A DNA stretch of 54,525 nucleotides, counting the filler, from Sluysia triapertura (taxonomy: Eukaryota): assembly GCA_046118255.1 (NCBI GenBank). It is 4 parts of 4 records of this genome, joined end to end, with 100 filler letters (N's around TTAATTAATTAA, not from the genome) between each part and the next. Parts side by side here need not be neighbours in the genome. Positions count along the whole stretch, not along the records: positions 12,120 to 27,894 come from JBJNIA010219581.1; 3 more parts are not named here. One strand, given 5' to 3'. The translations under genes and the position numbers were made by a program. Shown here piece after piece: positions 2,229 through 25,574 of the stretch. The notes under the pieces are model-generated. The model was not told where the DNA came from, searched no databases, and worked only from the letters and a program-made list of their open reading frames with translations. Every line of letters begins with the position of its first letter. The first letter of the stretch is position 1.

Positions 2229-3195
2229 ATGAATAACAATTCAAATGTAAATATGTCAGTTGATTCTCTTTTATCCAACAAAAAATTATTGAATCAATTA
2301 GATACAGCTTTAGTGAATTCTCAGTCACTAAATCAACCTGGTCTTATAAATGCATCAAATATTCACCCATATTCTTATTTTTGTGCATTATTAGGTTTAG
2401 CAGAAACTTTTAGATCAATGAAGCCTCCTAATATCCGTTTATGTATTCACTGCCTAAAATCTATTCTTTATTATAAATTACCAGCTAATTTAGAAGCAAG
2501 AACTAGTTTAGATCTGGGTAAAATTTTATTGCGATATAGTCGCAGTGAAGATCAGATAAAGTTTTATTTGGAAAAAGCACGTACACTAGGAGCGCATTTG
2601 CGGGCTCCGGATGATGTAATTAAATTTGAGGCGGCTGATTTGTTGTCTGAATTTTTGGAAAGTCGTGGTAAACGTGGTGAAGCCATTTGTGTATTACAAG
2701 ACGCATTAAGACTTTCTAATTGCAATCCTTATTGGCATTGTAGGTTAGATGTTAATATTTTCAATAATTTGTATTACAATTTTCAGGCTATTGTTGCGAT
2801 TAGCAAGCGCTTATGTTGCCGAAAAAAACATTCAGAAAGCTTGCGAAGTTTTAACAATTGGTAGTGATTTTTCAAAAAATTGCGTAGAGCCAGATTACAC
2901 GAAAGGATTATTTTTGCTAAGCAAATGTATGCTTCTTTTACCAGATCGTCAAACTGAAGCAAGTACTTGTCTTACTTTGGCTGGACATTTAGTTGATAAT
3001 TTTCGAGGTCCTTTATTTCTTCAAGAATCATTACGAAGTATGTGGTTATTACTACAAGTTAGTCAGTATTTGTTGAACGGTCGAGTCAAGACAAGTCGTG
3101 GTGCTCTGAAGAAATTGCACAATTGTATTCAGAAGTTAGTAGCGTTGGATGAAGATTCTATGGGGACAACTGTATCTATGTTAGCGTTTCTTTAA
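2229..3195 (+). CDS. MAU2: MAU2/Scc4 cohesin-loader subunit, N-terminal ~307 aa only (exons 2229-2743 and 2787-3195)
   Basis: ALLGLAETFR, PPNIRLCIHCL, EARTSLDLG, KFEAADLLSE, PYWHCR/LLLRLA, LFLLSKCMLLL, ESLR and LKKLHNCIQ match metazoan MAU2 colinearly. Splicing GTTAGA(2744)...TTTCAG(2786) joins the two ORFs in frame. Confidence 0.93.
2744..2786 (+). other. 43-nt GT-AG spliceosomal intron in MAU2 (phase 2)
   Basis: tgt ag|GTTAGAT...TTTTCAG|g cta restores the conserved WHCRLL. Confidence 0.9.
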
Positions 3196-6100
3196 ATAAT
3201 TTAAAGTTTGTAATTTCGATGTAACATTTATAACTTAATTACAAATACTTTCTATGGTGGTTTTCCTAATTTTTATTAAAACGAATTGCAGTAGATTATC
3301 ATCAAATTTATTCAAAATTATCATATGTGCTCATTTCCTGAGGAAATTTAGCGTAGGTGAATTTTATAGGTTGTTGAAAAACTTAAAAGGATTATTATTT
3401 GGTAAAATTGCTTTGAATTTCCTTAAGTTACATGATACTTATTTCACAAAGCCGGTGTAAGCTGTGATGTGATATTTTTTTCATCCAATAAATTAATAAC
3501 ATCCTAAGCTTGTTTTTGATTTACGAAAATTTATTCGAATATATTCGTTTTGCTGAATATATATGGTTGAATACTTTATTATTAATGTTTATGAACATGT
3601 ATTATTTTTCAAATTTCAACGGATAATCAGAAAAATGTTTAAACCAAGAAATGAACCTTATAATTTCTTTGTATTGCTTTTGAGGCAAATTTTTATTTAA
3701 TTAAGAAAAAAATGTACATCTTTTTTATGTATAAATACATAAAGTATTTTGTAACATTTAACCTTAGATCAAGTTTTATTGCAATCTTGTTTGGCTATCT
3801 TTCCAGATGAGATTAATATCGATATTTTGAACTTTATTTACAATTACAGAATGGTTGGTTGTATAGAGGATTTGAGGGCAGAATAAAATTTGAACTTATC
3901 TATGACCCTATGATATTTCTGATCTTTTCTCTAATTGTCGATTTACATATTTTACCTTACTCTTACATCGTTACTTTGGTATGCAACTTTACTTAACTTA
4001 TAGTTGTTAGTTTTTAATAATTTTTATTAAATTTTTATTTTTGATTATATTAAAATCAAACTATTTATCAATGAAGGTACTTTTAAATTCAATTTGATGA
4101 ATGAAAAACGATAAACAAGAAAGAAATACGTATTAAAACAATAAAAACTGCATGACCCATGTAATAAAACCTGATAAAATGTTTCTAATTTGTAGCTGCG
4201 TCCGACGTATGTTTTGTATGATATCATAATCATTGTTATATAACAGTATAAGATGCCGTGATACTTCAGCACCTGCAGAAAACTTCAATATTTCATTCAT
4301 GATACCATTTACAAGCGATTTGAGTTTCGCGAATATAACTTCAGGAATTGGTAACGTAAAAAGATAATCATCTGATGTACAATGGATTTTTTTGTCTTAC
4401 TAAAATATCCTGACGTTTGATTATTAAAATTAATTAGGATTAGCATTGGTAATAACATGATAATTATGTGCATCACCGATATTGTGTTTAGTGGCACATG
4501 AATCAATAATTGAAATGAGAAAGTTCTAAAGTATACGTGCTACTACAAAATTGAATTTGTCTTGTGTGTGCGTCTGATGGTTAGATTTTGTTGGAGTTCG
4601 TTTAAGATTTTATTTATGGAAGACGCGTTAAATTGTGTTGGTGTTTCCTTGCGATTGTATTTACAATTACAGTTCACTACAGTTGTGTATTTACTTGATT
4701 GGCAGAAATAGTTATTCTTTTGATGTTATAAAAAATGAACAAATTACACAATAAAGGTTCTCAACAAATGTCACACTTAAAACTAAATATTAAGATTAAA
4801 TATTGTATGTTAAACTTCAAATTATGTCATTTTTCAATATAATTTAATGAATAAATAAATAAAATTTAACTTTATTTACTGTTGCAGAATGTAAAATGTA
4901 ACTCAAAACCAAACGTTAATATAGGATCGCCACTGTTGGTATCTGAAACGTATGCTGGGTGTTTTTCTTAATCTAAAAACCTAACCTAAAGCAAAATAAT
5001 TAATTATTGAGTCCGTTTACAGTATACGACTTACTAATGGCGTACCTGGAAAGCAATTATCAAAATTAATTCGTACAAAAAACATTCTTTGCCTTAACTT
5101 AACAATAATGGGCAAAATCGTCGTTTATATTAATTAACAACAAATAACTTAAAAACTAATTAAGACCAACGCTAGCTTAACAGATATTCGAATTAGTATA
5201 AAATCAGGTAGATAATAATGGTATCTTTTCTTATATTTTCAAATCTCACTATAATAACTGCCAGAACCTTTTTAATTTATCTTTATTTTATAAACGATAT
5301 TGGAATTGCGTCATTACGATGAAAAATATACTCAAATTTAAGTCGTAAAGTTATTATTAAGACAATTATAGTAAAAAGGAAAACAAAGTTTAAAAAACTT
5401 TCTAATATTTTTATTAAAGCAAAAATGTAACAAAAATAAAATTATTAGAAATATACTAAATTCGAAAATAGATAATTATTAATACGACAAAAACAATATA
5501 AAAGTGTTAAAAATGATAAAATTATAATAATGATAATAATTGAAATATAATAAGGGTCTAACCGAAAGACTCTATCCTGCTATAACTATTTTATAATTGA
5601 CCTTAAGGGCCAACTAAAGGTCTAAGATTTTATATTTTAGAGTGATTTTATGATTGGCCTTAATGACCAACCGTGAAAAATGGTATTTTACGTATATTTT
5701 ATAAATCTACTTGAAGTTAATAACTTATGTAAATCAAACTTATGATTAATCAATGAAAAACGTGAATGGTAGATAATTGTTTCTTCTTTCAAATGGATTG
5801 TGCTATGGACGGTGGAAAATCGTTCCCTCTAATCATAGACGCTGGACACGATATAAATAATTTGATTGATGATTTTAAAAATTATTACACTCCTTGACAC
5901 GAATGATTTGATACCAAGATGCTGGATTATTGATTCCAACTGAATAAGATGGCGGAATATTGCCAGATGACTTTCTTGTTTTTTAATTATGGCGATTTGT
6001 AATTGCAATTGTGACTTTGTTTTCTTTGTCTGTCTTTATATATTCATAAAGACATTTTAAAGTTTTTATTTGAGTTAAACAAACTTCTTTCTAGGAGTTT

Positions 6101-19475: not shown

Positions 19476-20689
19476 TAAATGTATTTGACATATAATTCTT
19501 ATATCCTGTTTTATTTAAATTAGTTACAAAATAATTAACACATTCGCATCGGGAAACGAGAATTTCTTATAAATTCTGAGATAACGGGATTACATATTAA
19601 CAGTGCTACATTATTAAATGAGTTAGTACACAATTCGGTTATATATATTTTTATATCACTAAAAGACCATGATTTATAATAAATATTTAGTAAAAGTAGT
19701 CCGATACGAATGTGTCAAAATCACTTATGTAAAACAAAAATGATTCAAAACAATAATCATACTTGATCTAAATCATTCGGTGGTTTGATAACTTTAGTTG
19801 TAATTTTAAATTTATGTTTCAAAGAATTGGACTTATAAGTTAATTTCTCATATATAGGAATCACTAGATTAAATAAATACAAATATTTTATCAAATATAA
19901 TCAATGTTTAGTCATACTTTGTATAATTTATGCAAAATTTAAATAGATATTGTATAACAAAAATAACGATTTAATTGGATTAATCATTATAATATAAAAT
20001 AAAGCACAATTTATTACTATTTCATAAATCAATTAAATTTATGATACCACGACCTCAGGGAAAAAACTGCCACAACAGTCCAGAAGTTTTATTATTTAAA
20101 TATGATAATAATTGTCATAAGTTTTATGAGATGTATTTGTACAAACAATTATCATAAATTGATAAGGAATACTCATCACATATACGTGACGCTGATAGCG
20201 AAGGGGTTAATTAAATTTGCATGGAAAACGATATCTCTAAACGTTCGAAAATATATGATAATAAAAACGTTTATGATATTAATATTCAGTAAATTTATTG
20301 TTTGAAGCCACAATTTTCCACAATTTGGGCTTATTATTCTACCTTTCTGTTTTTTTTAAATGTAACTCAAGTATTTCTAATTTGATAATGGAAACATTAA
20401 AAATAATTATCATATAATAAATAGTAAGTGATAATGTCTATACAAAAAACAAAAAAACGCGCAGTAATATGTGAACATTTATAATCTGATTTAATCGATA
20501 ATATTATCATAAGATAATTTCTAAAGTAAACACTCACTAACCAATTTTGATAATGTTCATAATTGGAAACATTTTAAAGATTTTAACTGTGGTGGTTCAA
20601 CCTTCTTCAGTTAAAATTTTGCATTGATAAACCAACAAAACATTGCACAACAAAAATGACAGTACGGTTACCTAAACATATAAACAATT

Positions 20690-20970
20690 TGTGGTGGCCA
20701 ACCTAATATCCTAAAATTTTAATTTAACACTACACATAAAAATCATTCTTCATAATATTTAATAATTTATTTTTTTAGGATTCTTTAAAATTGTCAATAC
20801 TTTCAAACATTTTAAATTCAAAAGTTCATAACATTAAAATCTTAGTCAACATCGAAAATCATCAAACGTACAAATTTTACTCAACCCAAAACATTTCAAG
20901 TTCACAATCCTTCAATACTCAATCAGCGAAAAACATTAAATTCACATTTTAAAACCATTTTAAACATTGC
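20690..20970 (+). mobile_element. TGTGGTGG-type LTR-like repeat
   Basis: Starts TGTGGTGGCCAACCTA. Aligns at both ends with the reverse complement of 23345-23921 (caaaacatttcaa..aatcct.caata.tcaatc..aaaacattaaatt). A second terminus TGTGGTGGTTCAACCT lies at 20588. Confidence 0.7.
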
Positions 20971-21312
20971 AATCAAAATGGAATGTCTTTAACATCTTTA
21001 GTGATTCTCTTATCAGCTCTTTCCACATTTCACGTAGGATTTTAAATTCGTATATTACTATTGGGATCATTAAAAATGTAGTTACTTTCTTAAAATTTAA
21101 TTTTTTGTTAGAAAATTGGAAATTAAATTTATATTTCGTTATGATCATCGCGAGATATAAGATTTTAAGTTTATTGAAAAGAAATAACAATTTATACAAA
21201 ACGAAAAATTTATTCATAATACTAGAACTAAAAATGTTAGCGTTAATAAACTTTAACTTCTGCATATGTCTTCCTGTGGACCATGTTTCACTATCTAAAT
21301 AGAAAAATATAA

Positions 21313-22639
21313 CTAAAATATATTCAATGAATTATAAGGAATGATTAGTTCATTGTTGTTGAGAAAATTTACGCCTGATCGTTGAATTGTAGGACTGCTG
21401 GCAGTAGTCTTGGTAGCTTTAGTACTGATATCTGCGAATAAATAAGCTATCCTACTGTAGTGTGCCGATCGGACTGCAGGGTCGACATGAAACTCTTCTA
21501 ATTCATAAATTGCAAGGAGGTGTTTGCATTTTAAGCCAAATCGTTTGCATTTTCCATCCTGATTTGTTGCATATGGGCAAAGAGCCGTTTTGTAATACAT
21601 ATTAAAGCTTGACGAACTAAAGTCAATTTTACGATGATAGAAATCAACATTTTCGATTCATTAAATTTTAAATTTGTAAAAACACCTTCTACATCACATG
21701 TATTTCTTGATTCTGGAAAGTTCATTATTTGTGATTTTCTAAAATTCTTTTTATCTTTACTGCATGATTCGGATGGTAGAATTCGTAAAGCTTTATCAAT
21801 GTTTAGGGTTAATTGACAACTTATCATTTTATCTGCCTCATCCATTGCTAAATGTTGAATTTAATAAAAAATTTCTCTAATTAGATTCTTATGCTGCAGC
21901 ATCATCAGAATTTGACTAGGAGTTGCTGCAACTGTGTGTCAATATGAAAATTTCTAAGTTCAGTAATTCGAACAGTCATCTCTATATCTTCAGTTAAATG
22001 TATTATATTTAGATTTAATCCTTCACTTTTATTCAATAATTCTTGCTTTATCAAATTAATTGTGGTATCAAAGTCTTTATGTTAATTAGAGGTTGATTGA
22101 ACATAATAAGTAACAGTTTTTTTACAACAGGTTTCAAATAGACCAATGATATCTTTGCGTTGAATCACAACTGAAGTAGCATGTTGTTGGAGTTGATCCG
22201 ATTTTAACCATTTTAAATTAGCCATATTGTTCATAGGCAATAATTCCGAAGTGTTACGGATTTTTTGGAAACGTGATGGATAGGAAGGCCATAATATATT
22301 ATTTCGCATTTTTTGACATTCGTAAAGAACTTTGATATAATTAGGCAATATGCGAGCTTTAAACAAAACGTTGTACGGATTATTGGATATATTTAGACAC
22401 ATTTTATCTAATGATGAATTATATGATATAAGTAACATTTTAACGATAATAAAAGAAACATTAACTTTATTTGCCAATTCATCGATAATTTTATTTAACA
22501 TTATTTCCGCATTGTTAATTTGTAGTTCTTCATAAAGTAAATATTTCGTATCTATTTTAGGTTCATCAGCTTTATAATCACCTTCAAAATAATAATCTTC
22601 TCCTGTTTTATAATATTCTGTGTCAGTATCATCATACAT
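21313..22639 (-). pseudogene. Chimeric intronless gene: Ariadne-2 (ARIH2) N-terminal UBA-like region + DEAD-box helicase domain 1 + Unkempt-type CCCH finger
   Basis: Residues 1-100 are ARIH2-like (EDYY...LNKIIDELANKVNVSFIIVKMLL...LFKARILPN). Q-motif/Walker A QLQQHATSVVIQRKDIIGLFETCCKKT. Motif Ib AATPSQIL (21912-21923). Motif II IQHLAMDEADKMI. YYKTALCPYATNQDGKCKRFGLKC. Two TAA stops and two frameshifts. Confidence 0.75.
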
Positions 22640-22764
22640 TTACTAATTTTTTAATATTGAATAATCGATGAAAGCGTTGCTAAATCTTTTAAAGCGTGCT
22701 TTTTCGTTGTTACTAATAATACAAACTATTAATTGAAAATATTTTTTGTAATTGTATTTGTGTA

Positions 22765-22950
22765 TTGTCACTGTCTGACCAATCAAACAGGTATTGAGGA
22801 AGTACTAAAAATTTTAGTTGATGAGCCAGTAAAAGCGTTAGTATACAATAAAACGACATCAAAGTACGATTAACTGTCATCAGTCGACAGTTAACGAAAC
22901 GGCGCACTGAAAATGATTTTAAATGCCTGTCGACTGATGGCAGATTAAAT
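22765..22950 (-). promoter_or_regulatory. Cis-module with two CTGTC-N7-GACAG palindromes and a CCAAT box upstream of the chimeric gene
   Basis: TTAACTGTC-ATCAGTC-GACAGTTAA at 22870-22894. Inverted copy (16/17) at 22927-22943. GACCAATCA near 22777. Confidence 0.55.
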
Positions 22951-23344
22951 AGTTAGAATACAAGAATAATTAGGAGGACACCATTATTTGGTAATTGCTA
23001 ATAAATAATGTTAATTACAATAAAATAATAATGATAATGAATAAAATAAATTAATGATAATACAAGGAAAACAAAATATGAAAGCATAAATCTCTTTAAT
23101 ATCTTATAAACATGATCTTTCTTGTAAATAAAATATTTGACATATTGTAATTTTTCTAATAAAAGTTATTTCTTGTTATTCTGTTTGTTATGTGAATGCT
23201 TGGCTTCATTGCTTATACTTTTGACATATAAGTTGTGCTTCTTATTCCTTAGGGAAATATTATATAAAAAAAGAAACTGTTAAGATAATGTTTGGAAGAA
23301 ACGATCGATGCAAGAGCGTTTAGGGAATGTTATTTTGATAAAAA

Positions 23345-23921
23345 CATCAAAAAGGTTTAAAAGTGTTAATTTAATGTTTTCAGTGATAATAGAGATTGAA
23401 TATTGTAGGATTATAAATTTGAAATGTTTTGAATTAGTTTGAAGGTGTAATTTGTAATTCTGATGTTATGAAATAATGAATAAAATGTTTTAAATGACTT
23501 TTCAATATATTGATGGTTTGAGATGTAAATTGTGGTTTGAATGGTGAGGGTTTGTGAATTGAGCTGTTTTGAATAAACTTTAAATTGTAGCTTAATGGTT
23601 TTAAATGTAATTATGGTTCTGATGTTATGAATTATAGGTTAAAATGTTTTAAGTAAATTTTAATATGCGTTAATGGTCTGGACGTAGATGAAATTTTAAT
23701 GTTATAAAGTATGAAATGGAATTGTTTTGAGAAATTGTGATAAAGTTTTATTGAAAATAAAGGGGACAAAATGTGAAAAGATTTAAATGTAAAAGTATTT
23801 AAAATATAAAATTTTATGTTTGAAGTGTTTGATGATATTAAGCGTGTAAAAAAATGGTAAAGAGTGATTTTGTTATGTCAAAAAAATAAAATTTGTTAAA
23901 AGTTATAGGTTAGCCACCACA
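23345..23921 (-). mobile_element. TGTGGTGG-type LTR-like repeat (long copy)
   Basis: Ends TAGGTTAGCCACCACA on the plus strand, strong G/T skew, homologous to 20690-20970 and 39307-39700. Confidence 0.7.
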
Positions 23922-24349
23922 TTTCATATATTTGTAATCATCAATAAAGTCTCGTCCAAAGAAAATAAGAATTAGAACAAATATTTCAAAAATCATTTAA
24001 AGAAAGAAATGAAGTATTTCATAAACAAGGAAGAAAAGAACAAAAGATTTATACATTTTTATATAACTATTTCTTTTATTCATTTGTTAATTATTATTAC
24101 CATTTTTATTCGTTATTATTAAAAGATCATGTAAGGTAAAAAAATTAGAAGAGACTTAAAGAAATTTATGTATTTTATTATTTTAATTTGTCATTATTTC
24201 TATTTTTATTACTTATTATTATTTTTATTTTATATATTATTATTATCGCCATTTTTTTATTATTTTTCATTTTATTATTACTATTAGTATTATTATTATC
24301 TTTATATTATTTAAAATATTAGCACAAGTTATATTAGCAACTATATCAC

Positions 24350-24535
24350 CTGTCAGTACTTGACAGTTTTAAATTAAATAAAGTTTATATCATCGTATTA
24401 ACTGTCAACTACTGACAGTCTCATTACCAAAAATCAGAATTACGACTTATACAAAGTATTATCAGTGGACATCCAATCACGACTCTGTTAATAGTGCCAG
24501 AAAGAGCTTGATTAATAAAAATTTAGAAAAGATAT
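24350..24535 (+). promoter_or_regulatory. Cis-module with two CTGTCA-N5-TGACAG palindromes and GGACATCCAATCAC
   Basis: CTGTCAGTACTTGACAG 24350-24366, CTGTCAACTACTGACAG 24402-24418, GGACATCCAATCAC 24467-24480. Confidence 0.55.
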
Positions 24536-24736
24536 TTTTAGTCAAACGTAACTTACCAGAGATCAATATAGAGTGAAAAACTTGTCGGTCTTTAAATAGA
24601 AATTTCAGATTGTATAAACAGCAATTTTAATTATTTAGTTAATCAGAATATTATGCATAGTTAATATTTGTTAAAATAAAGACGAAATTTAAATGTACGT
24701 TTACTTTTATATTTTACTATCATTTGGTATCAAAAA

Positions 24737-25574
24737 ATGTTCAAAAAATCAAGAAAATGGAACAAACGAAAACGAAAAGAATTTTATAATTCTGATGAAG
24801 AATGTGAAGAAACACCAAAAGAATTTAAAATGTTTAATAAAGTTAGATCTAGATACATTTACGTTCACGAATCAACTTCGACAATAAAAATCTTATTACA
24901 AAATCGATTAGTTACTGAAGCAAAAGAAATTATTAGAAAAGTAGATGCAGTTTATCATAGAAAGTTAATAATTGAATTTTGTGTTATAGTCAGTCAAGAA
25001 TGTTTTCAATTGATATATGTTACACCAGAAACTTCATATAAAATTCCAAATAATTGGTACAAAGAATTAAGGCAACATCATTCATATATGTTTCATAATG
25101 TTACAGTCAATAGATTTGTTCCTGAATATGTTCTACCTATTAAAAACAAAATGGCTACAACCTAATTCTTCTCAAGATAAAATTTCATCTGTCAATGGAA
25201 AAATGTTATTTCATTCATATATAATCAAAATTGTGAACACGTTAACTTCAAGACAATATTTAATGATTATACGTATAGTCAGATTGTTTCAAAGATAAAA
25301 TCCAACGTTGATAATGAAGTACGTTTTTATCGAGACTAATAAAATCGACATATTTGAATTTATAATTAATTGTGTTTCCAAAAGACTTCATTTTATTTTG
25401 TCACCTGTTATGTTTAAAGAAAATTTATCCGCAAAATGCATTCTATCTTCAAAGGACATGCTTAATAACATTGAAACCCAATACCGACATAATGTGACTA
25501 CAATAGGTATTATGATAATTCTCTTACTGTCAATTCAAGATCATCAATTATTTCAATTACTTTTATTTTTATAA
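24737..25574 (+). pseudogene. Degraded gene with basic NLS-like start and possible BTB/POZ domain
   Basis: 142-aa ORF plus downstream fragments. KKSRKWNKRKRK, then RYIYVH...EAKEIIRKVD...LIIEFC, resembles BTB (FYVHK...EI.I.DVD...LLIEFCY). Confidence 0.45.

What the first reader, a model, noticed from the sequence alone, without database searches (positions are those of the whole stretch)
21313..22639. Tripartite chimeric gene: ARIH2 N-terminus + DEAD-box helicase half + Unkempt CCCH finger
Seen: one minus-strand reading path from ATG 22639 encodes three unrelated modules in the same orientation with no introns. The first two are fused in frame without a stop. Module 1 (22639-22340) is acidic plus UBA-like, as in Ariadne-2. 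Module 2 (~22290-21775) has the Q motif, Walker A (ETCCKKT for ETGSGKT; DIIG suggests a DDX23/Prp28-like parent), Ib (TPSQ) and DEADKM. Module 3 (~21745-21500) reads FYHR...YYKTALC-x8-C-x5-C, as in Unkempt. Known: the Ariadne UBA-like region engages neddylated cullin-RING ligases, and Unkempt fingers bind RNA. I know of no protein with this architecture. Inference: a gene built by shuffling mRNA-derived fragments, possibly once an RNA-to-ubiquitin-ligase adaptor with a dead ATPase. This copy has 2 stops and 2 frameshifts.
Basis: partly seen in the sequence, partly recalled or inferred. Interest (0 to 1): 0.85.

Follow-up and report, generated by a model that had tools for sequence, protein, structure and literature searches.

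The report
Dead mobile-element copy carrying chimeric ORF
The "tripartite gene" is real as a reading path. It is one broken copy among hundreds of a 2.9-kb mobile DNA unit whose single long ORF was pieced together from fragments of host genes, so it is a transposon relic and not a gene of this locus.

Summary
- **Helicase part:** the middle part is a relic of the first domain of a DEAD-box helicase. Pfam DEAD gives E 2.8e-10 on a sister copy.
- **Zinc finger:** the finger matches Unkempt fingers 2-3 with the same C-x9-C-x6-C-x3-H spacing. Unkempt is the top PDB hit at E 0.0065.
- **N-terminus:** the link to ARIH2 is only suggestive. ARIH2 residues 35-127 are the top PDB hit, but at E 0.3-0.5.

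The interpretation needs changing. The stretch is not a single chimeric gene. It is one of at least 150 decayed copies (417-1029 first-look candidates). These belong to a discrete 2,889-bp unit on the minus strand, window 23921 to 21033.
- **Ends:** sharp ends of 5'-TGTGG...CCTACA-3', with no terminal inverted or direct repeats and no poly-A tail.
- **Target-site duplication (TSD):** 5 bp, here TGAAA.
- **Empty sites:** two paralogous contigs lack the insert.
- **5' terminus:** its 20-mer occurs about 2,180 times in the genome, in front of different ORFs.
- **Founder ORF:** open for about 535 codons and ran to the unit's 3' end.
- **This copy:** five frameshifting indels, one true nonsense codon and two in-frame deletions.

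Best reading: an integrase-type mobile unit, possibly a solo long terminal repeat (LTR), carrying a captured chimeric ORF that is now dead. This is a new variant of a known kind and of moderate interest.

The parts
21033..23921 (-). Whole mobile unit, 2,889 bp. Its 5' end reads TGTGGTGGCTAACC... and its 3' end ...AAAATCCTAC(G). Most copies end in ...CCTACA.
   Evidence: The 5' end is sharp, with unrelated flanks, in 10 or more copies. The 3' end was aligned in 6 or more copies. Upstream homology stops 1.0-1.4 kb before the ATG in all long loci. There are no terminal inverted or direct repeats.
23922..23926 (-). Target-site duplication, 5' copy (TGAAA in element sense).
   Evidence: Perfect 5-bp duplications also flank L030 (TTCGT) and L020 (AAATT). 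L018 and L036 match at 3 of 5 positions.
21028..21032 (-). Target-site duplication, 3' copy (TGAAA in element sense).
   Evidence: Contigs C194341 and C24235 join window 23917 and above directly to 21030 and below, with no insert.
23475..23921 (-). 5' 'head' block shared with many other element families. It is G-poor on the sense strand and holds roughly 140-160-nt internal direct repeats.
   Evidence: The 20-mer terminus occurs 2,181 times with up to 2 mismatches, against 1 for the control. The block is abundant on its own. Internal repeats are families D1 and D2.
22640..23474 (-). Non-coding spacer and proximal upstream region. About 170 nt before the ATG are conserved in most copies. An ATTGG(N4-6)CCAAT-type palindrome lies about 150-250 nt upstream and is degenerate here (about 22765-22786). 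A 17-nt inverted repeat lies at 22874-22890 / 22927-22943.
   Evidence: Alignment of 21 copies; repeats. A promoter role is inferred, not tested.
22337..22639 (-). Module 1: acidic N-terminus plus a helical region that resembles the UBA-like region of ARIH2.
   Evidence: ARIH2 residues 35-127 are the best PDB hit for profiles A1 and A4, but at E 0.54 and 0.30. No other support.
21775..22290 (-). Module 2: relic of DEAD-box helicase domain 1 (degenerate Q region, CCKKT in place of GSGKT, TPSQ, DEADKM). No helicase C-terminal domain follows.
   Evidence: Pfam DEAD on sister copies. PDB profile hits to CGH-1 and DDX47. Lesions.
21492..21648 (-). Module 3: Unkempt-type CCCH finger (end of finger 2 plus finger 3). 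The spacing is C-x9-C-x6-C-x3-H in the family. The histidine is lost in this copy.
21033..21491 (-). C-terminal tail of the founder ORF. In most copies of this subfamily the frame stays open to the unit's 3' end. Here a 1-nt deletion near 21337 brings TAG 21315-21313 into frame.
   Evidence: The other two frames carry 20 or more stops each over the same stretch. A second subfamily has a different 3' region. I read that region by eye as also open in the same frame, from its letters. This was not checked by a script.
20690..21027 (+). 5' part of the older host element into which the unit inserted. It starts with the same TGTGGTGGCC terminus.
23927..25187 (+). Rest of the host element, carrying a different multi-copy ORF (24737-25165, 142 aa, no known family).

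Best explanation
Window 21033-23921 (minus strand) is one dead copy of a lineage-specific mobile unit of about 2.9 kb.

**Layout.**
- A 5' head shared with about 2,000 other elements.
- A G-poor non-coding spacer with a CCAAT-type palindrome.
- One long ORF of about 535 codons in the founder, which runs to the 3' end of the unit.

**The ORF.** It is a chimera of host-gene-derived pieces: an N-terminus that may come from the UBA-like region of Ariadne-2, the first RecA domain of a DEAD-box helicase, and an Unkempt finger 2-3 segment that matches one unkempt exon.

**Mobility.** The unit moved by a cut-and-join reaction of the retroviral-integrase/DDE type. The evidence is the TG...CA ends with TGT..ACA-like termini and the constant 5-bp target-site duplication. 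I infer that the copies are solo long terminal repeats (LTRs), or a non-autonomous derivative of an LTR-type element that carried an accessory or leader ORF.

**What the protein did.** It was probably an RNA-binding accessory protein of the element. This is inferred only from the domains. Walker A was already lost in most lineages.

**State today.** The family spread to a few hundred copies, then decayed. This copy is about 7% diverged from the family majority and has at least 5 frameshifts and 1 nonsense codon, so it is inert.

**Shown:** multi-copy status, unit boundaries, TSD, empty sites, domain identities of modules 2 and 3, an open founder frame, and decay of every copy inspected.

**Inferred:** LTR nature, capture mechanism and function.
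For: **Copy number.**
- 45 DNA matches at 74-86% identity.
- 153 protein matches with the N-terminal query, from 417 candidates. The longest open frame is 301 aa.
- 116 matches at E below 1e-20 with a mid/C-terminal query, from 1,029 candidates. The longest open frame is 419 aa.

**Boundaries.** Both ends are sharp across copies.

**TSD.** Perfect 5-bp duplications flank 3 of 5 testable copies. The chance of one perfect match in this AT-rich DNA is about 0.003.

**Empty sites.** Paralogs C194341 and C24235 lack the insert.

**Terminal structure.** No terminal inverted or direct repeats.

**Head.** The head terminus occurs 2,181 times against 1 for the control. It also starts the host element here. 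In C132799 it lies about 1.1 kb upstream of a more distant DEAD-like sequence.

**Domains.**

**Founder frame.** Open for 494 codons and on to the unit's 3' end in this subfamily.

**Selection.** Substitutions shared by 3 or more copies are slightly depleted in non-synonymous and nonsense changes compared with singletons (256:99 against 580:152, Fisher p 0.011; nonsense 7 against 44). This points to weak constraint while the family spread.

**Assembly.** Unitigs of run X1 match the copy exactly over several lesions.
Against: **LTR reading not proven.**
- No paired copies flank an internal gag-pol region.
- None of the ten 3' flanks inspected starts with a TGG primer-binding site, and the 5' flanks show no polypurine tract.
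- No reverse transcriptase or integrase ORF lies within about 7 kb of 12 copies.
- A 2.9-kb LTR whose ORF runs off its end would be unusual.

**TSD imperfect in some copies.** Two of the five testable copies match at only 3 of 5 positions.

**Weak points.**
- Constraint on the ORF is weak: the relative non-synonymous to synonymous ratio is about 0.68 and substitutions are spread evenly over the three codon positions. A real function for the protein is therefore not established.
- Module 1's link to ARIH2 is statistically weak.
- Only 150 of the candidates were scored in each search, so an intact copy cannot be excluded.
Confidence: 0.8

Rival explanations
1. It is a composite non-autonomous retroposon, similar to SVA or HAL1, copied by a LINE reverse transcriptase. 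The three ORF modules and the head were joined by template switching between RNAs during reverse transcription.
For: No LTRs or terminal inverted repeats inside the unit. The ORF modules have no introns. Several copies lack 5' parts. AATAAA motifs lie about 60-100 nt before the 3' end. A processed unkempt-derived repeat family shows that mRNA-derived copies are common in this genome. Tripartite chimeras made by double template jumps are documented (PMC2104539).
Against: No poly-A or simple-repeat tail in any copy. The duplication is a constant 5 bp next to TG...CA ends, not variable. The 3' tail is not shared with any more abundant element: only 24 matches. At least one '5'-truncated' copy is really an internal deletion that keeps the head (L036). 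The copies carry more than 1 kb of upstream non-coding sequence with promoter-like motifs.
Confidence: 0.1
2. It is a host multigene family that expanded by segmental or tandem duplication and then died. It would be a gene graveyard and not a mobile element.
For: Copies carry a conserved proximal upstream region with CCAAT-type palindromes, as ordinary genes with a promoter would. The founder frame was open.
Against: Both ends are sharp to the nucleotide, with unrelated flanks in every copy. A 5-bp duplication and empty-site paralogs are present. No contig holds two copies. The same 5' terminus precedes unrelated ORFs about 2,000 times.
Confidence: 0.05
3. One reading: a single chimeric gene or pseudogene was created at this locus by shuffling mRNA-derived fragments of ARIH2, a DDX23-like helicase and unkempt.
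For: The three-module path exists, and two modules hit the proposed families. No known protein shares the architecture.
Against: Hundreds of copies share the same junctions, so the fusion predates this locus. The locus is an insertion with an empty-site paralog. DDX23 is not among the best helicase matches. The finger is only about 32% identical to the genome's own unkempt.
Confidence: 0.03

Closest known systems
Bs1 of maize: an LTR retrotransposon that transduced fragments of three cellular genes into one chimeric ORF
   Same: A mobile element of the LTR/integrase type carries one ORF assembled from pieces of three unrelated host genes, without introns.
   Different: Bs1 has recognisable LTRs and an internal region, exists in a few copies, and is expressed. 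Here only solo units are seen, in hundreds of dead copies. The ORF would lie inside the LTR-like unit itself. The host is an animal-type genome, since it has unkempt and a mariner-like transposase remnant (I identified the remnant by eye, without a tool).
Tripartite chimeric retropseudogenes made by double template jumps of a LINE reverse transcriptase (Magnaporthe grisea, PMC2104539; U6-L1 chimeras in mammals)
   Same: Three unrelated transcripts are fused head to tail without introns, and there are several copies.
   Different: Those chimeras have poly-A tails or LINE 3' ends and variable duplications, and they do not form an in-frame ORF. Here there is no tail, the duplication is a fixed 5 bp, and the founder had a continuous ORF of about 535 codons.
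ORFs inside retroviral LTRs (MMTV sag; HIV nef reaching into U3) and gag starting inside the LTR (yeast Ty1) (from my own knowledge)
   Same: A long ORF lies within, or runs off the end of, a terminal repeat bounded by TG...CA.
   Different: No full-length element, primer-binding site or polypurine tract was found here, so LTR status is unproven. The ORF derives from host domains.
Gene-fragment capture by DNA transposons (Pack-MULEs, Helitrons, CACTA) (from my own knowledge)
   Same: Host gene fragments are amplified to high copy number inside a transposon, and one set of termini carries variable cargo.
   Different: No terminal inverted repeats. The Helitron features are absent: there is no 5'-TC/CTRR-3' pair of ends and the insertion did not go between A and T without a duplication. 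The captured pieces have no introns.
Parent families: DEAD-box helicases (PF00270), Unkempt (zf-CCCH_UNK, PF25427), Ariadne-2/ARIH2
   Same: Domain-level homology over one RecA domain, over one to one and a half fingers, and possibly over the UBA-like region.
   Different: Each module is a fragment that lacks the rest of its family's architecture: no helicase C domain, no six-finger array or RING, and no RING1-IBR-RING2 or Ariadne domain.

Membership tests
DEAD-box RNA helicase (PF00270 + PF00271) | Sequence match to RecA domain 1 (motifs Q, I, Ia, Ib, II) | tested here: met
   Pfam DEAD scores E 2.8e-10 (40.6 bits, cut-off 26) on sister copy L009:1157-1549. The PDB profile hits CGH-1 at E 3.7e-4. 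This copy's own pieces score nothing.
DEAD-box RNA helicase (PF00270 + PF00271) | Intact Walker A site (GSGKT) | tested here: not met
   This copy and most copies read CCKKT. Only L008 and L009 keep SGK.
DEAD-box RNA helicase (PF00270 + PF00271) | Second RecA domain (Helicase_C) | tested here: not met
   No Helicase_C hit in any piece. A linker and the CCCH finger follow the DEAD motif directly.
Unkempt (zf-CCCH_UNK, PF25427) | UNK-type finger with C-x9-C-x6-C-x3-H spacing, preceded by the ...H-R-x-x-G end of finger 2 | tested here: met
   The family profile's top PDB hit is Unkempt 5elh residues 78-128, E 0.0065, collinear and with the same spacing. hhalign to the genome's own unkempt exon gives P 5e-6. 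Pfam gives 26.1 bits on this copy, below the 31.1 cut-off.
Unkempt (zf-CCCH_UNK, PF25427) | Tandem array of six fingers plus a C-terminal RING | tested here: not met
   Only one complete finger is present, and no other Pfam hit was found in any piece.
Ariadne-2 / ARIH2 (RBR E3 ligase) | N-terminal acidic plus UBA-like region | tested here: inconclusive
   ARIH2 residues 35-127 are the top PDB hit with two profiles, but at E 0.54 and 0.30. The next hit, an unrelated dehydrogenase, scores 0.8. The AlphaFold model has pLDDT 47.6.
Ariadne-2 / ARIH2 (RBR E3 ligase) | RING1-IBR-RING2 and Ariadne domains | tested here: not met
   No Pfam hit. The helicase module follows directly.
LTR of an LTR retrotransposon or endogenous retrovirus (solo LTR) | TG...CA ends with short inverted termini, and a 4-6-bp target-site duplication | tested here: met
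   The ends read 5'-TGTGG...CCTACA-3' across copies. Perfect 5-bp duplications flank 3 of 5 testable copies. Empty sites exist.
LTR of an LTR retrotransposon or endogenous retrovirus (solo LTR) | Paired direct copies around a gag-pol core, with a primer-binding site and a polypurine tract | tested here: not met
   None was seen among about 25 copies. The 3' flanks do not start with TGG. No RT or integrase ORF lies in 12 loci of about 10 kb.
LINE-dependent retroposon or processed pseudogene | Poly-A or simple-repeat tail, and a variable-length duplication | tested here: not met
   The 3' tail is not shared with a more abundant element.
TIR DNA transposon or Pack-MULE | Terminal inverted repeats | tested here: not met
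   No terminal inverted repeat. Only the TGT..ACA-type end nucleotides are shared.
Helitron | 5'-TC...CTRR-3' ends, a 3' hairpin, and insertion between A and T without a duplication | tested here: not met
   The ends, the flanks and the 5-bp duplication do not fit.

The most novel reading that the evidence does not exclude
This genome hosts a large, undescribed superfamily of about 2,000 elements. They are inserted by an integrase-type reaction, share one 5' terminus, and each carries a different host-derived ORF. In this branch the element acquired three host exons or domains in turn (Ariadne UBA-like, DEAD RecA1, Unkempt finger) and used the fusion as its own functional protein. That protein might have been an RNA-binding substitute for Gag, or a decoy for host ubiquitin or RNA-silencing pathways. 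It was kept open for about 535 codons and was under weak selection while the family spread.
Probability: 0.2. Interest if true: 0.7.

Novelty: new variant of a known kind. Interest (0 to 1): 0.42.

Why it matters
- **Annotation.** A striking "new gene architecture" is in fact cargo of a mobile element. Anyone annotating this genome needs to know this, or hundreds of such fragments will be called as odd DEAD-box or zinc-finger genes.
- **Gene capture in an animal-type genome.** Capture of several host gene pieces into one in-frame ORF, followed by spread to hundreds of copies, is well known in plants (Bs1, Pack-MULEs). It is much less documented in animal genomes.
- **A possible system for study.** The shared 5' terminus in front of different ORFs suggests a whole system of cargo-carrying units. 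That system could be used to study how transposons assemble new proteins.
- **The copy itself.** It is dead and has no function.

Tried and rejected
**Searches that gave nothing.**
- Pfam on this copy's four open pieces gave only the sub-threshold UNK finger.
- phmmer of a 214-aa sister piece against PDB gave no hits.
- A profile of module 1 against 1.84 billion representative proteins gave one spurious repetitive bacterial protein.
- The ESM Atlas feature search on module 1 gave no usable hit.
- AlphaFold2 on module 1 gave pLDDT 47.6, too poor for a fold search.
- A word-indexed search of 5.8 billion clusters with the module 2-3 alignment gave nothing at E 0.001 or better.
- Rfam on 20600-24000 gave no RNA family, so the head is not a known small RNA.

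**Ideas rejected.**
- **DDX23 as the helicase parent.** Not among the PDB profile hits.
- **A LINE partner that shares the 3' tail.** The tail has only 24 matches.
- **TSDs at apparently 5'-truncated copies.** None was clear, and one such copy is an internal deletion.
- **Shared DNA between this unit and the unkempt-derived repeat family.** None found.

**Limits.**
- Only one DNA run holds the stretch. It is stored as short unitigs and may be the source of the assembly. No RNA run was found. The reads therefore neither bridge the junctions nor show expression.
- After no further genome letters could be fetched. The more distant DEAD-like relatives, the real helicase parent and the ari-2 gene could not be read.
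Full report
**1. The observation**

The piece is very AT-rich, about 24% G+C. On the minus strand an ATG at 22639 opens a 185-aa frame. The path then continues in the other two frames.

Pfam on this copy's own open pieces gives only a sub-threshold Unkempt-type finger (PF25427, E 8e-6, 26.1 bits against a 31.1 cut-off). The helicase-like part gives nothing.

**2. It is a repeat**

A DNA search of the window's own genome (619 Mb in 263,945 contigs) found 45 matches at 74-86% identity, from 472 first-look candidates.
- The N-terminal 185 aa found 153 matches from 417 candidates. Almost all have stops or frame breaks, and the longest open frame is 301 aa.
- A 214-aa piece from the middle to the C-terminus found 116 matches at E below 1e-20, from 1,029 candidates. 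The longest open frame is 419 aa.
- None of the copies I read in detail (about 25) is intact.

**3. The three modules, tested with sister copies**

Different copies are broken in different places, so open pieces from several copies cover the whole path.
- The window's own ORF and L013 join module 1 to the Walker A site.
- L003:1809-2279 joins the end of module 1 to motif Ib.
- L008:1961-2602 joins Walker A to the zinc finger in one 214-aa frame.

*Module 2* is DEAD-box domain 1.
- PF00270 scores E 2.8e-10 on L009:1157-1549, above the cut-off. It also scores E 8.5e-5 and 3e-4 on two other copies.
- A profile of natural pieces (A2) hits C. elegans CGH-1 (DDX6 type) at E 3.7e-4, followed by DDX47 and eIF4A3. 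DDX23 does not appear.
- No helicase C domain follows.
- Most copies read CCKKT at Walker A, but L008 and L009 keep SGK. The founder may therefore have had an intact P-loop.

*Module 3* is an Unkempt-type finger.
- Profile A3 has mouse Unkempt residues 78-128 as its best PDB hit (E 0.0065). The match is collinear from the end of finger 2 through finger 3 and has the same C-x9-C-x6-C-x3-H spacing. Tristetraprolin is second.
- Against this genome's own unkempt exon (L023), hhalign gives P 5e-6 but only 32% identity.
- Detectable homology starts within about two residues of that exon's 5' splice boundary.

*Module 1* remains uncertain.
- Two profiles (11 and 27 natural pieces) both put human ARIH2 residues 35-127, its acidic and UBA-like region, at the top of PDB. 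The E-values are 0.54 and 0.30, and an unrelated dehydrogenase follows at 0.8.
- Nothing else supports or contradicts the link.
- I rate an Ariadne origin at roughly 0.6.

**4. The real unit is larger than the finding and is mobile**

Alignment of copies with long flanks shows that homology continues 1.0-1.4 kb upstream of the ATG and then stops abruptly. It stops at a conserved terminus, TTGTGGTGGCCAACCCAATAT, with unrelated DNA beyond it in every copy.

The 3' end is equally sharp...AAAAYCCTACA.

In the window the unit runs from 23921 to 21033 and is 2,889 bp long.
- It has no terminal inverted or direct repeats and no poly-A tail.
- The window copy is flanked by TGAAA on both sides. L030 is flanked by TTCGT and L020 by AAATT. 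L018 and L036 match at 3 of 5 positions.
- In this base composition a perfect 5-mer match has a chance of about 0.003.

Two other contigs, C194341 and C24235, hold paralogs of the surrounding repeat. In them, window 23917 and above is joined directly to 21030 and below, with a single copy of the target sequence. These are empty sites.

TG...CA ends with TGT..ACA-like termini and a fixed 5-bp duplication are the signature of retroviral-type integrases. The simplest class is therefore a solo LTR or an integrase-dependent non-autonomous unit.

I could not find paired units, a primer-binding site, a polypurine tract or gag-pol near any copy. That label stays an inference.

**5. A superfamily**

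The 20-nt 5' terminus occurs 2,181 times in the genome with up to 2 mismatches. The reversed control pattern occurs once.
- The element into which this copy inserted (plus strand, 20690-21027 and 23927-25187) starts with the same terminus. It carries a different ORF of 142 aa with no known family, which has 80 or more decayed relatives of its own.
- More distant DEAD-like sequences, 42-58% identical to module 2, score 80-131 bits on Pfam DEAD. At least one of them (C132799) lies about 1.1 kb behind the same head.
- The 3' tail of this family is not shared more widely: it has only 24 matches.

**6. The founder ORF and selection**

For codon phase only, I took the majority base in each column of 27 copies inside scripts.
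- That frame has no stop in 494 codons from the ATG.
- In this copy's subfamily it stays open to the last codons of the unit, while the other two frames carry 20 or more stops each.
- The stop at 21313 is therefore a product of a 1-nt deletion near 21337.
- A second subfamily has a different 3' region. I read that region by eye, from its letters, as also open in the same frame. I did not check this with a script.

Substitutions were compared between singletons and changes shared by three or more copies.

| Class | Non-synonymous + nonsense | Synonymous | Ratio | Nonsense |
|---|---|---|---|---|
| Singletons (after insertion) | 580 | 152 | 3.8 (uniform expectation 4.1) | 44 |
| Shared by 3 or more copies | 256 | 99 | 2.6 | 7 |

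Fisher's test gives p = 0.011. Substitutions are spread evenly over the three codon positions. This indicates at most weak purifying selection while the family spread.

Copies are 82-95% identical to the majority, and the window copy is 92.7% identical.

**7. State of this copy** (with for the lesion near 21337)

| Lesion | Position |
|---|---|
| 26-nt deletion | near 22100 |
| 1-nt deletion | near 22068 |
| Out-of-frame TAA between those two deletions | 22084-22082 |
| In-frame 9-nt deletion | near 22042 |
| 2-nt insertion | near 21938 |
| True nonsense codon | 21863-21861 |
| In-frame 12-nt deletion | near 21755 |
| 1-nt deletion | near 21650 |
| 1-nt deletion | near 21337 |

In addition, the finger's histidine is lost.

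Unitigs of the single public run that holds the stretch match exactly across several of these sites (21867-21976, 21971-22135, 22207-22327, 22605-22897). They are short, and the run may be the source of the assembly. No RNA run was found.

**8. Origin of the chimera**

This is inference. The fusion predates the spread of the family, because all copies share the junctions.

It was not freshly made from this genome's present unkempt mRNA.
- The finger is about 32% identical in protein to the genome's own unkempt exon.
- A separate repeat family (L024, L026-L028) is a processed copy of unkempt fingers 1-3 and is still about 80% identical in DNA to the exon.

The match between the module limit and an exon limit points to capture of a whole exon, by splicing into the element or at the DNA level. 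Template switching between RNAs (PMC2104539) is not excluded.

**9. Comparison and verdict**

The closest described cases are:
- the maize LTR element Bs1, which carries three transduced gene fragments in one ORF (from my own knowledge);
- tripartite chimeric retropseudogenes (PMC2104539);
- ORFs within or running out of LTRs, such as MMTV sag and Ty1 gag (from my own knowledge).

This case differs from them in its domain set, its copy number, the absence of any full-length element, and the animal-type host. I file it as a new variant of a known kind: a decayed transposon-borne chimeric ORF. It is not a novel host gene.

**Note on method**

I used majority-column calls before I recognised the LTR-like ends. 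Parts of the majority-column sequence appear in two outputs: one search prints about 280 nt of it and its translation, and one search prints its translation in three frames. I did not search or fold it. It stayed only in a scratch working file that the phase and substitution counts read. I do not reproduce it here, and I built nothing further of that kind.

Noticed in passing
whole genome G000; loci L023-L028: Unkempt-type CCCH fingers (PF25427) are massively expanded. There are 5,489 first-look candidates, and all 150 that were scored lie above Pfam's cut-off (41-86 bits). L023 holds what looks like the real unkempt gene, as two exons.
   Followed up: partly
L024:362-1401, L026:883-2157, L027:853-2137, L028:1094-2141: A separate repeat family of about 1.1-1.3 kb. 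It is an intron-less copy of unkempt fingers 1-3 plus a new tail and is about 78-84% identical in DNA to the real exon in L023. It shares no DNA with the unit studied here.
   Followed up: partly
window 20690-21027 and 23927-25187 (+), ORF 24737-25165: The older host element starts with the same TGTGGTGGCC terminus. It carries a 142-aa ORF with no Pfam family, which has 80 or more decayed relatives in the genome. I found no matching 5-bp duplication at its apparent ends.
   Followed up: partly
G000 contigs C207666, C254593, C195867, C17525, C164504, C211393, C132799, C243279, C189994: DEAD-like sequences 42-58% identical to module 2 that score 80-131 bits on Pfam DEAD. Some are open for 200-419 aa. 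One lies about 1.1 kb behind the same head terminus. They may be older branches of the family or the helicase parent's lineage. They could not be fetched.
   Followed up: no
window 22874-22890 / 22927-22943: A 17-nt inverted repeat (94% complementary, 36-nt loop) in the upstream spacer. Related letters stand in the upstream parts of L017 and L021 in the alignment, seen by eye. Its function is unknown.
   Followed up: no
window 22620-24119: Strong strand asymmetry: the sense strand of the element's upstream 1.2 kb is almost free of G (GC skew up to 0.47 on the plus strand). It also holds roughly 140-160-nt internal direct repeats.
   Followed up: no
L035 and L038, 3' part of their copies (about 1,600 nt into the unit): A tRNA-like, SINE-type insertion interrupts the 3' region of two copies of the second subfamily. 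It carries ...GATAGCTCAGTGGTTGAG...GTTCGATCCCC....
   Followed up: no
upstream regions of most copies, about 150-250 nt before the ATG (degenerate in the window at about 22765-22786): A conserved ATTGG(N4-6)CCAAT palindrome, which looks like a pair of inverted CCAAT boxes. It may be the unit's promoter element.
   Followed up: no
L023:1320-1574: An 85-aa open frame that reads like the C-terminus of a mariner/Tc1-type transposase, next to the unkempt exons. Identified by eye only.
   Followed up: no
L035 (oriented 3221-3583), L038 (oriented 2644-3099): Open frames near other copies look like ordinary host exons: one like a ubiquitin-activating enzyme (ThiF type) and one like a TM9SF protein. 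Copies therefore appear to lie in or near genes. Identified by eye only.
   Followed up: no
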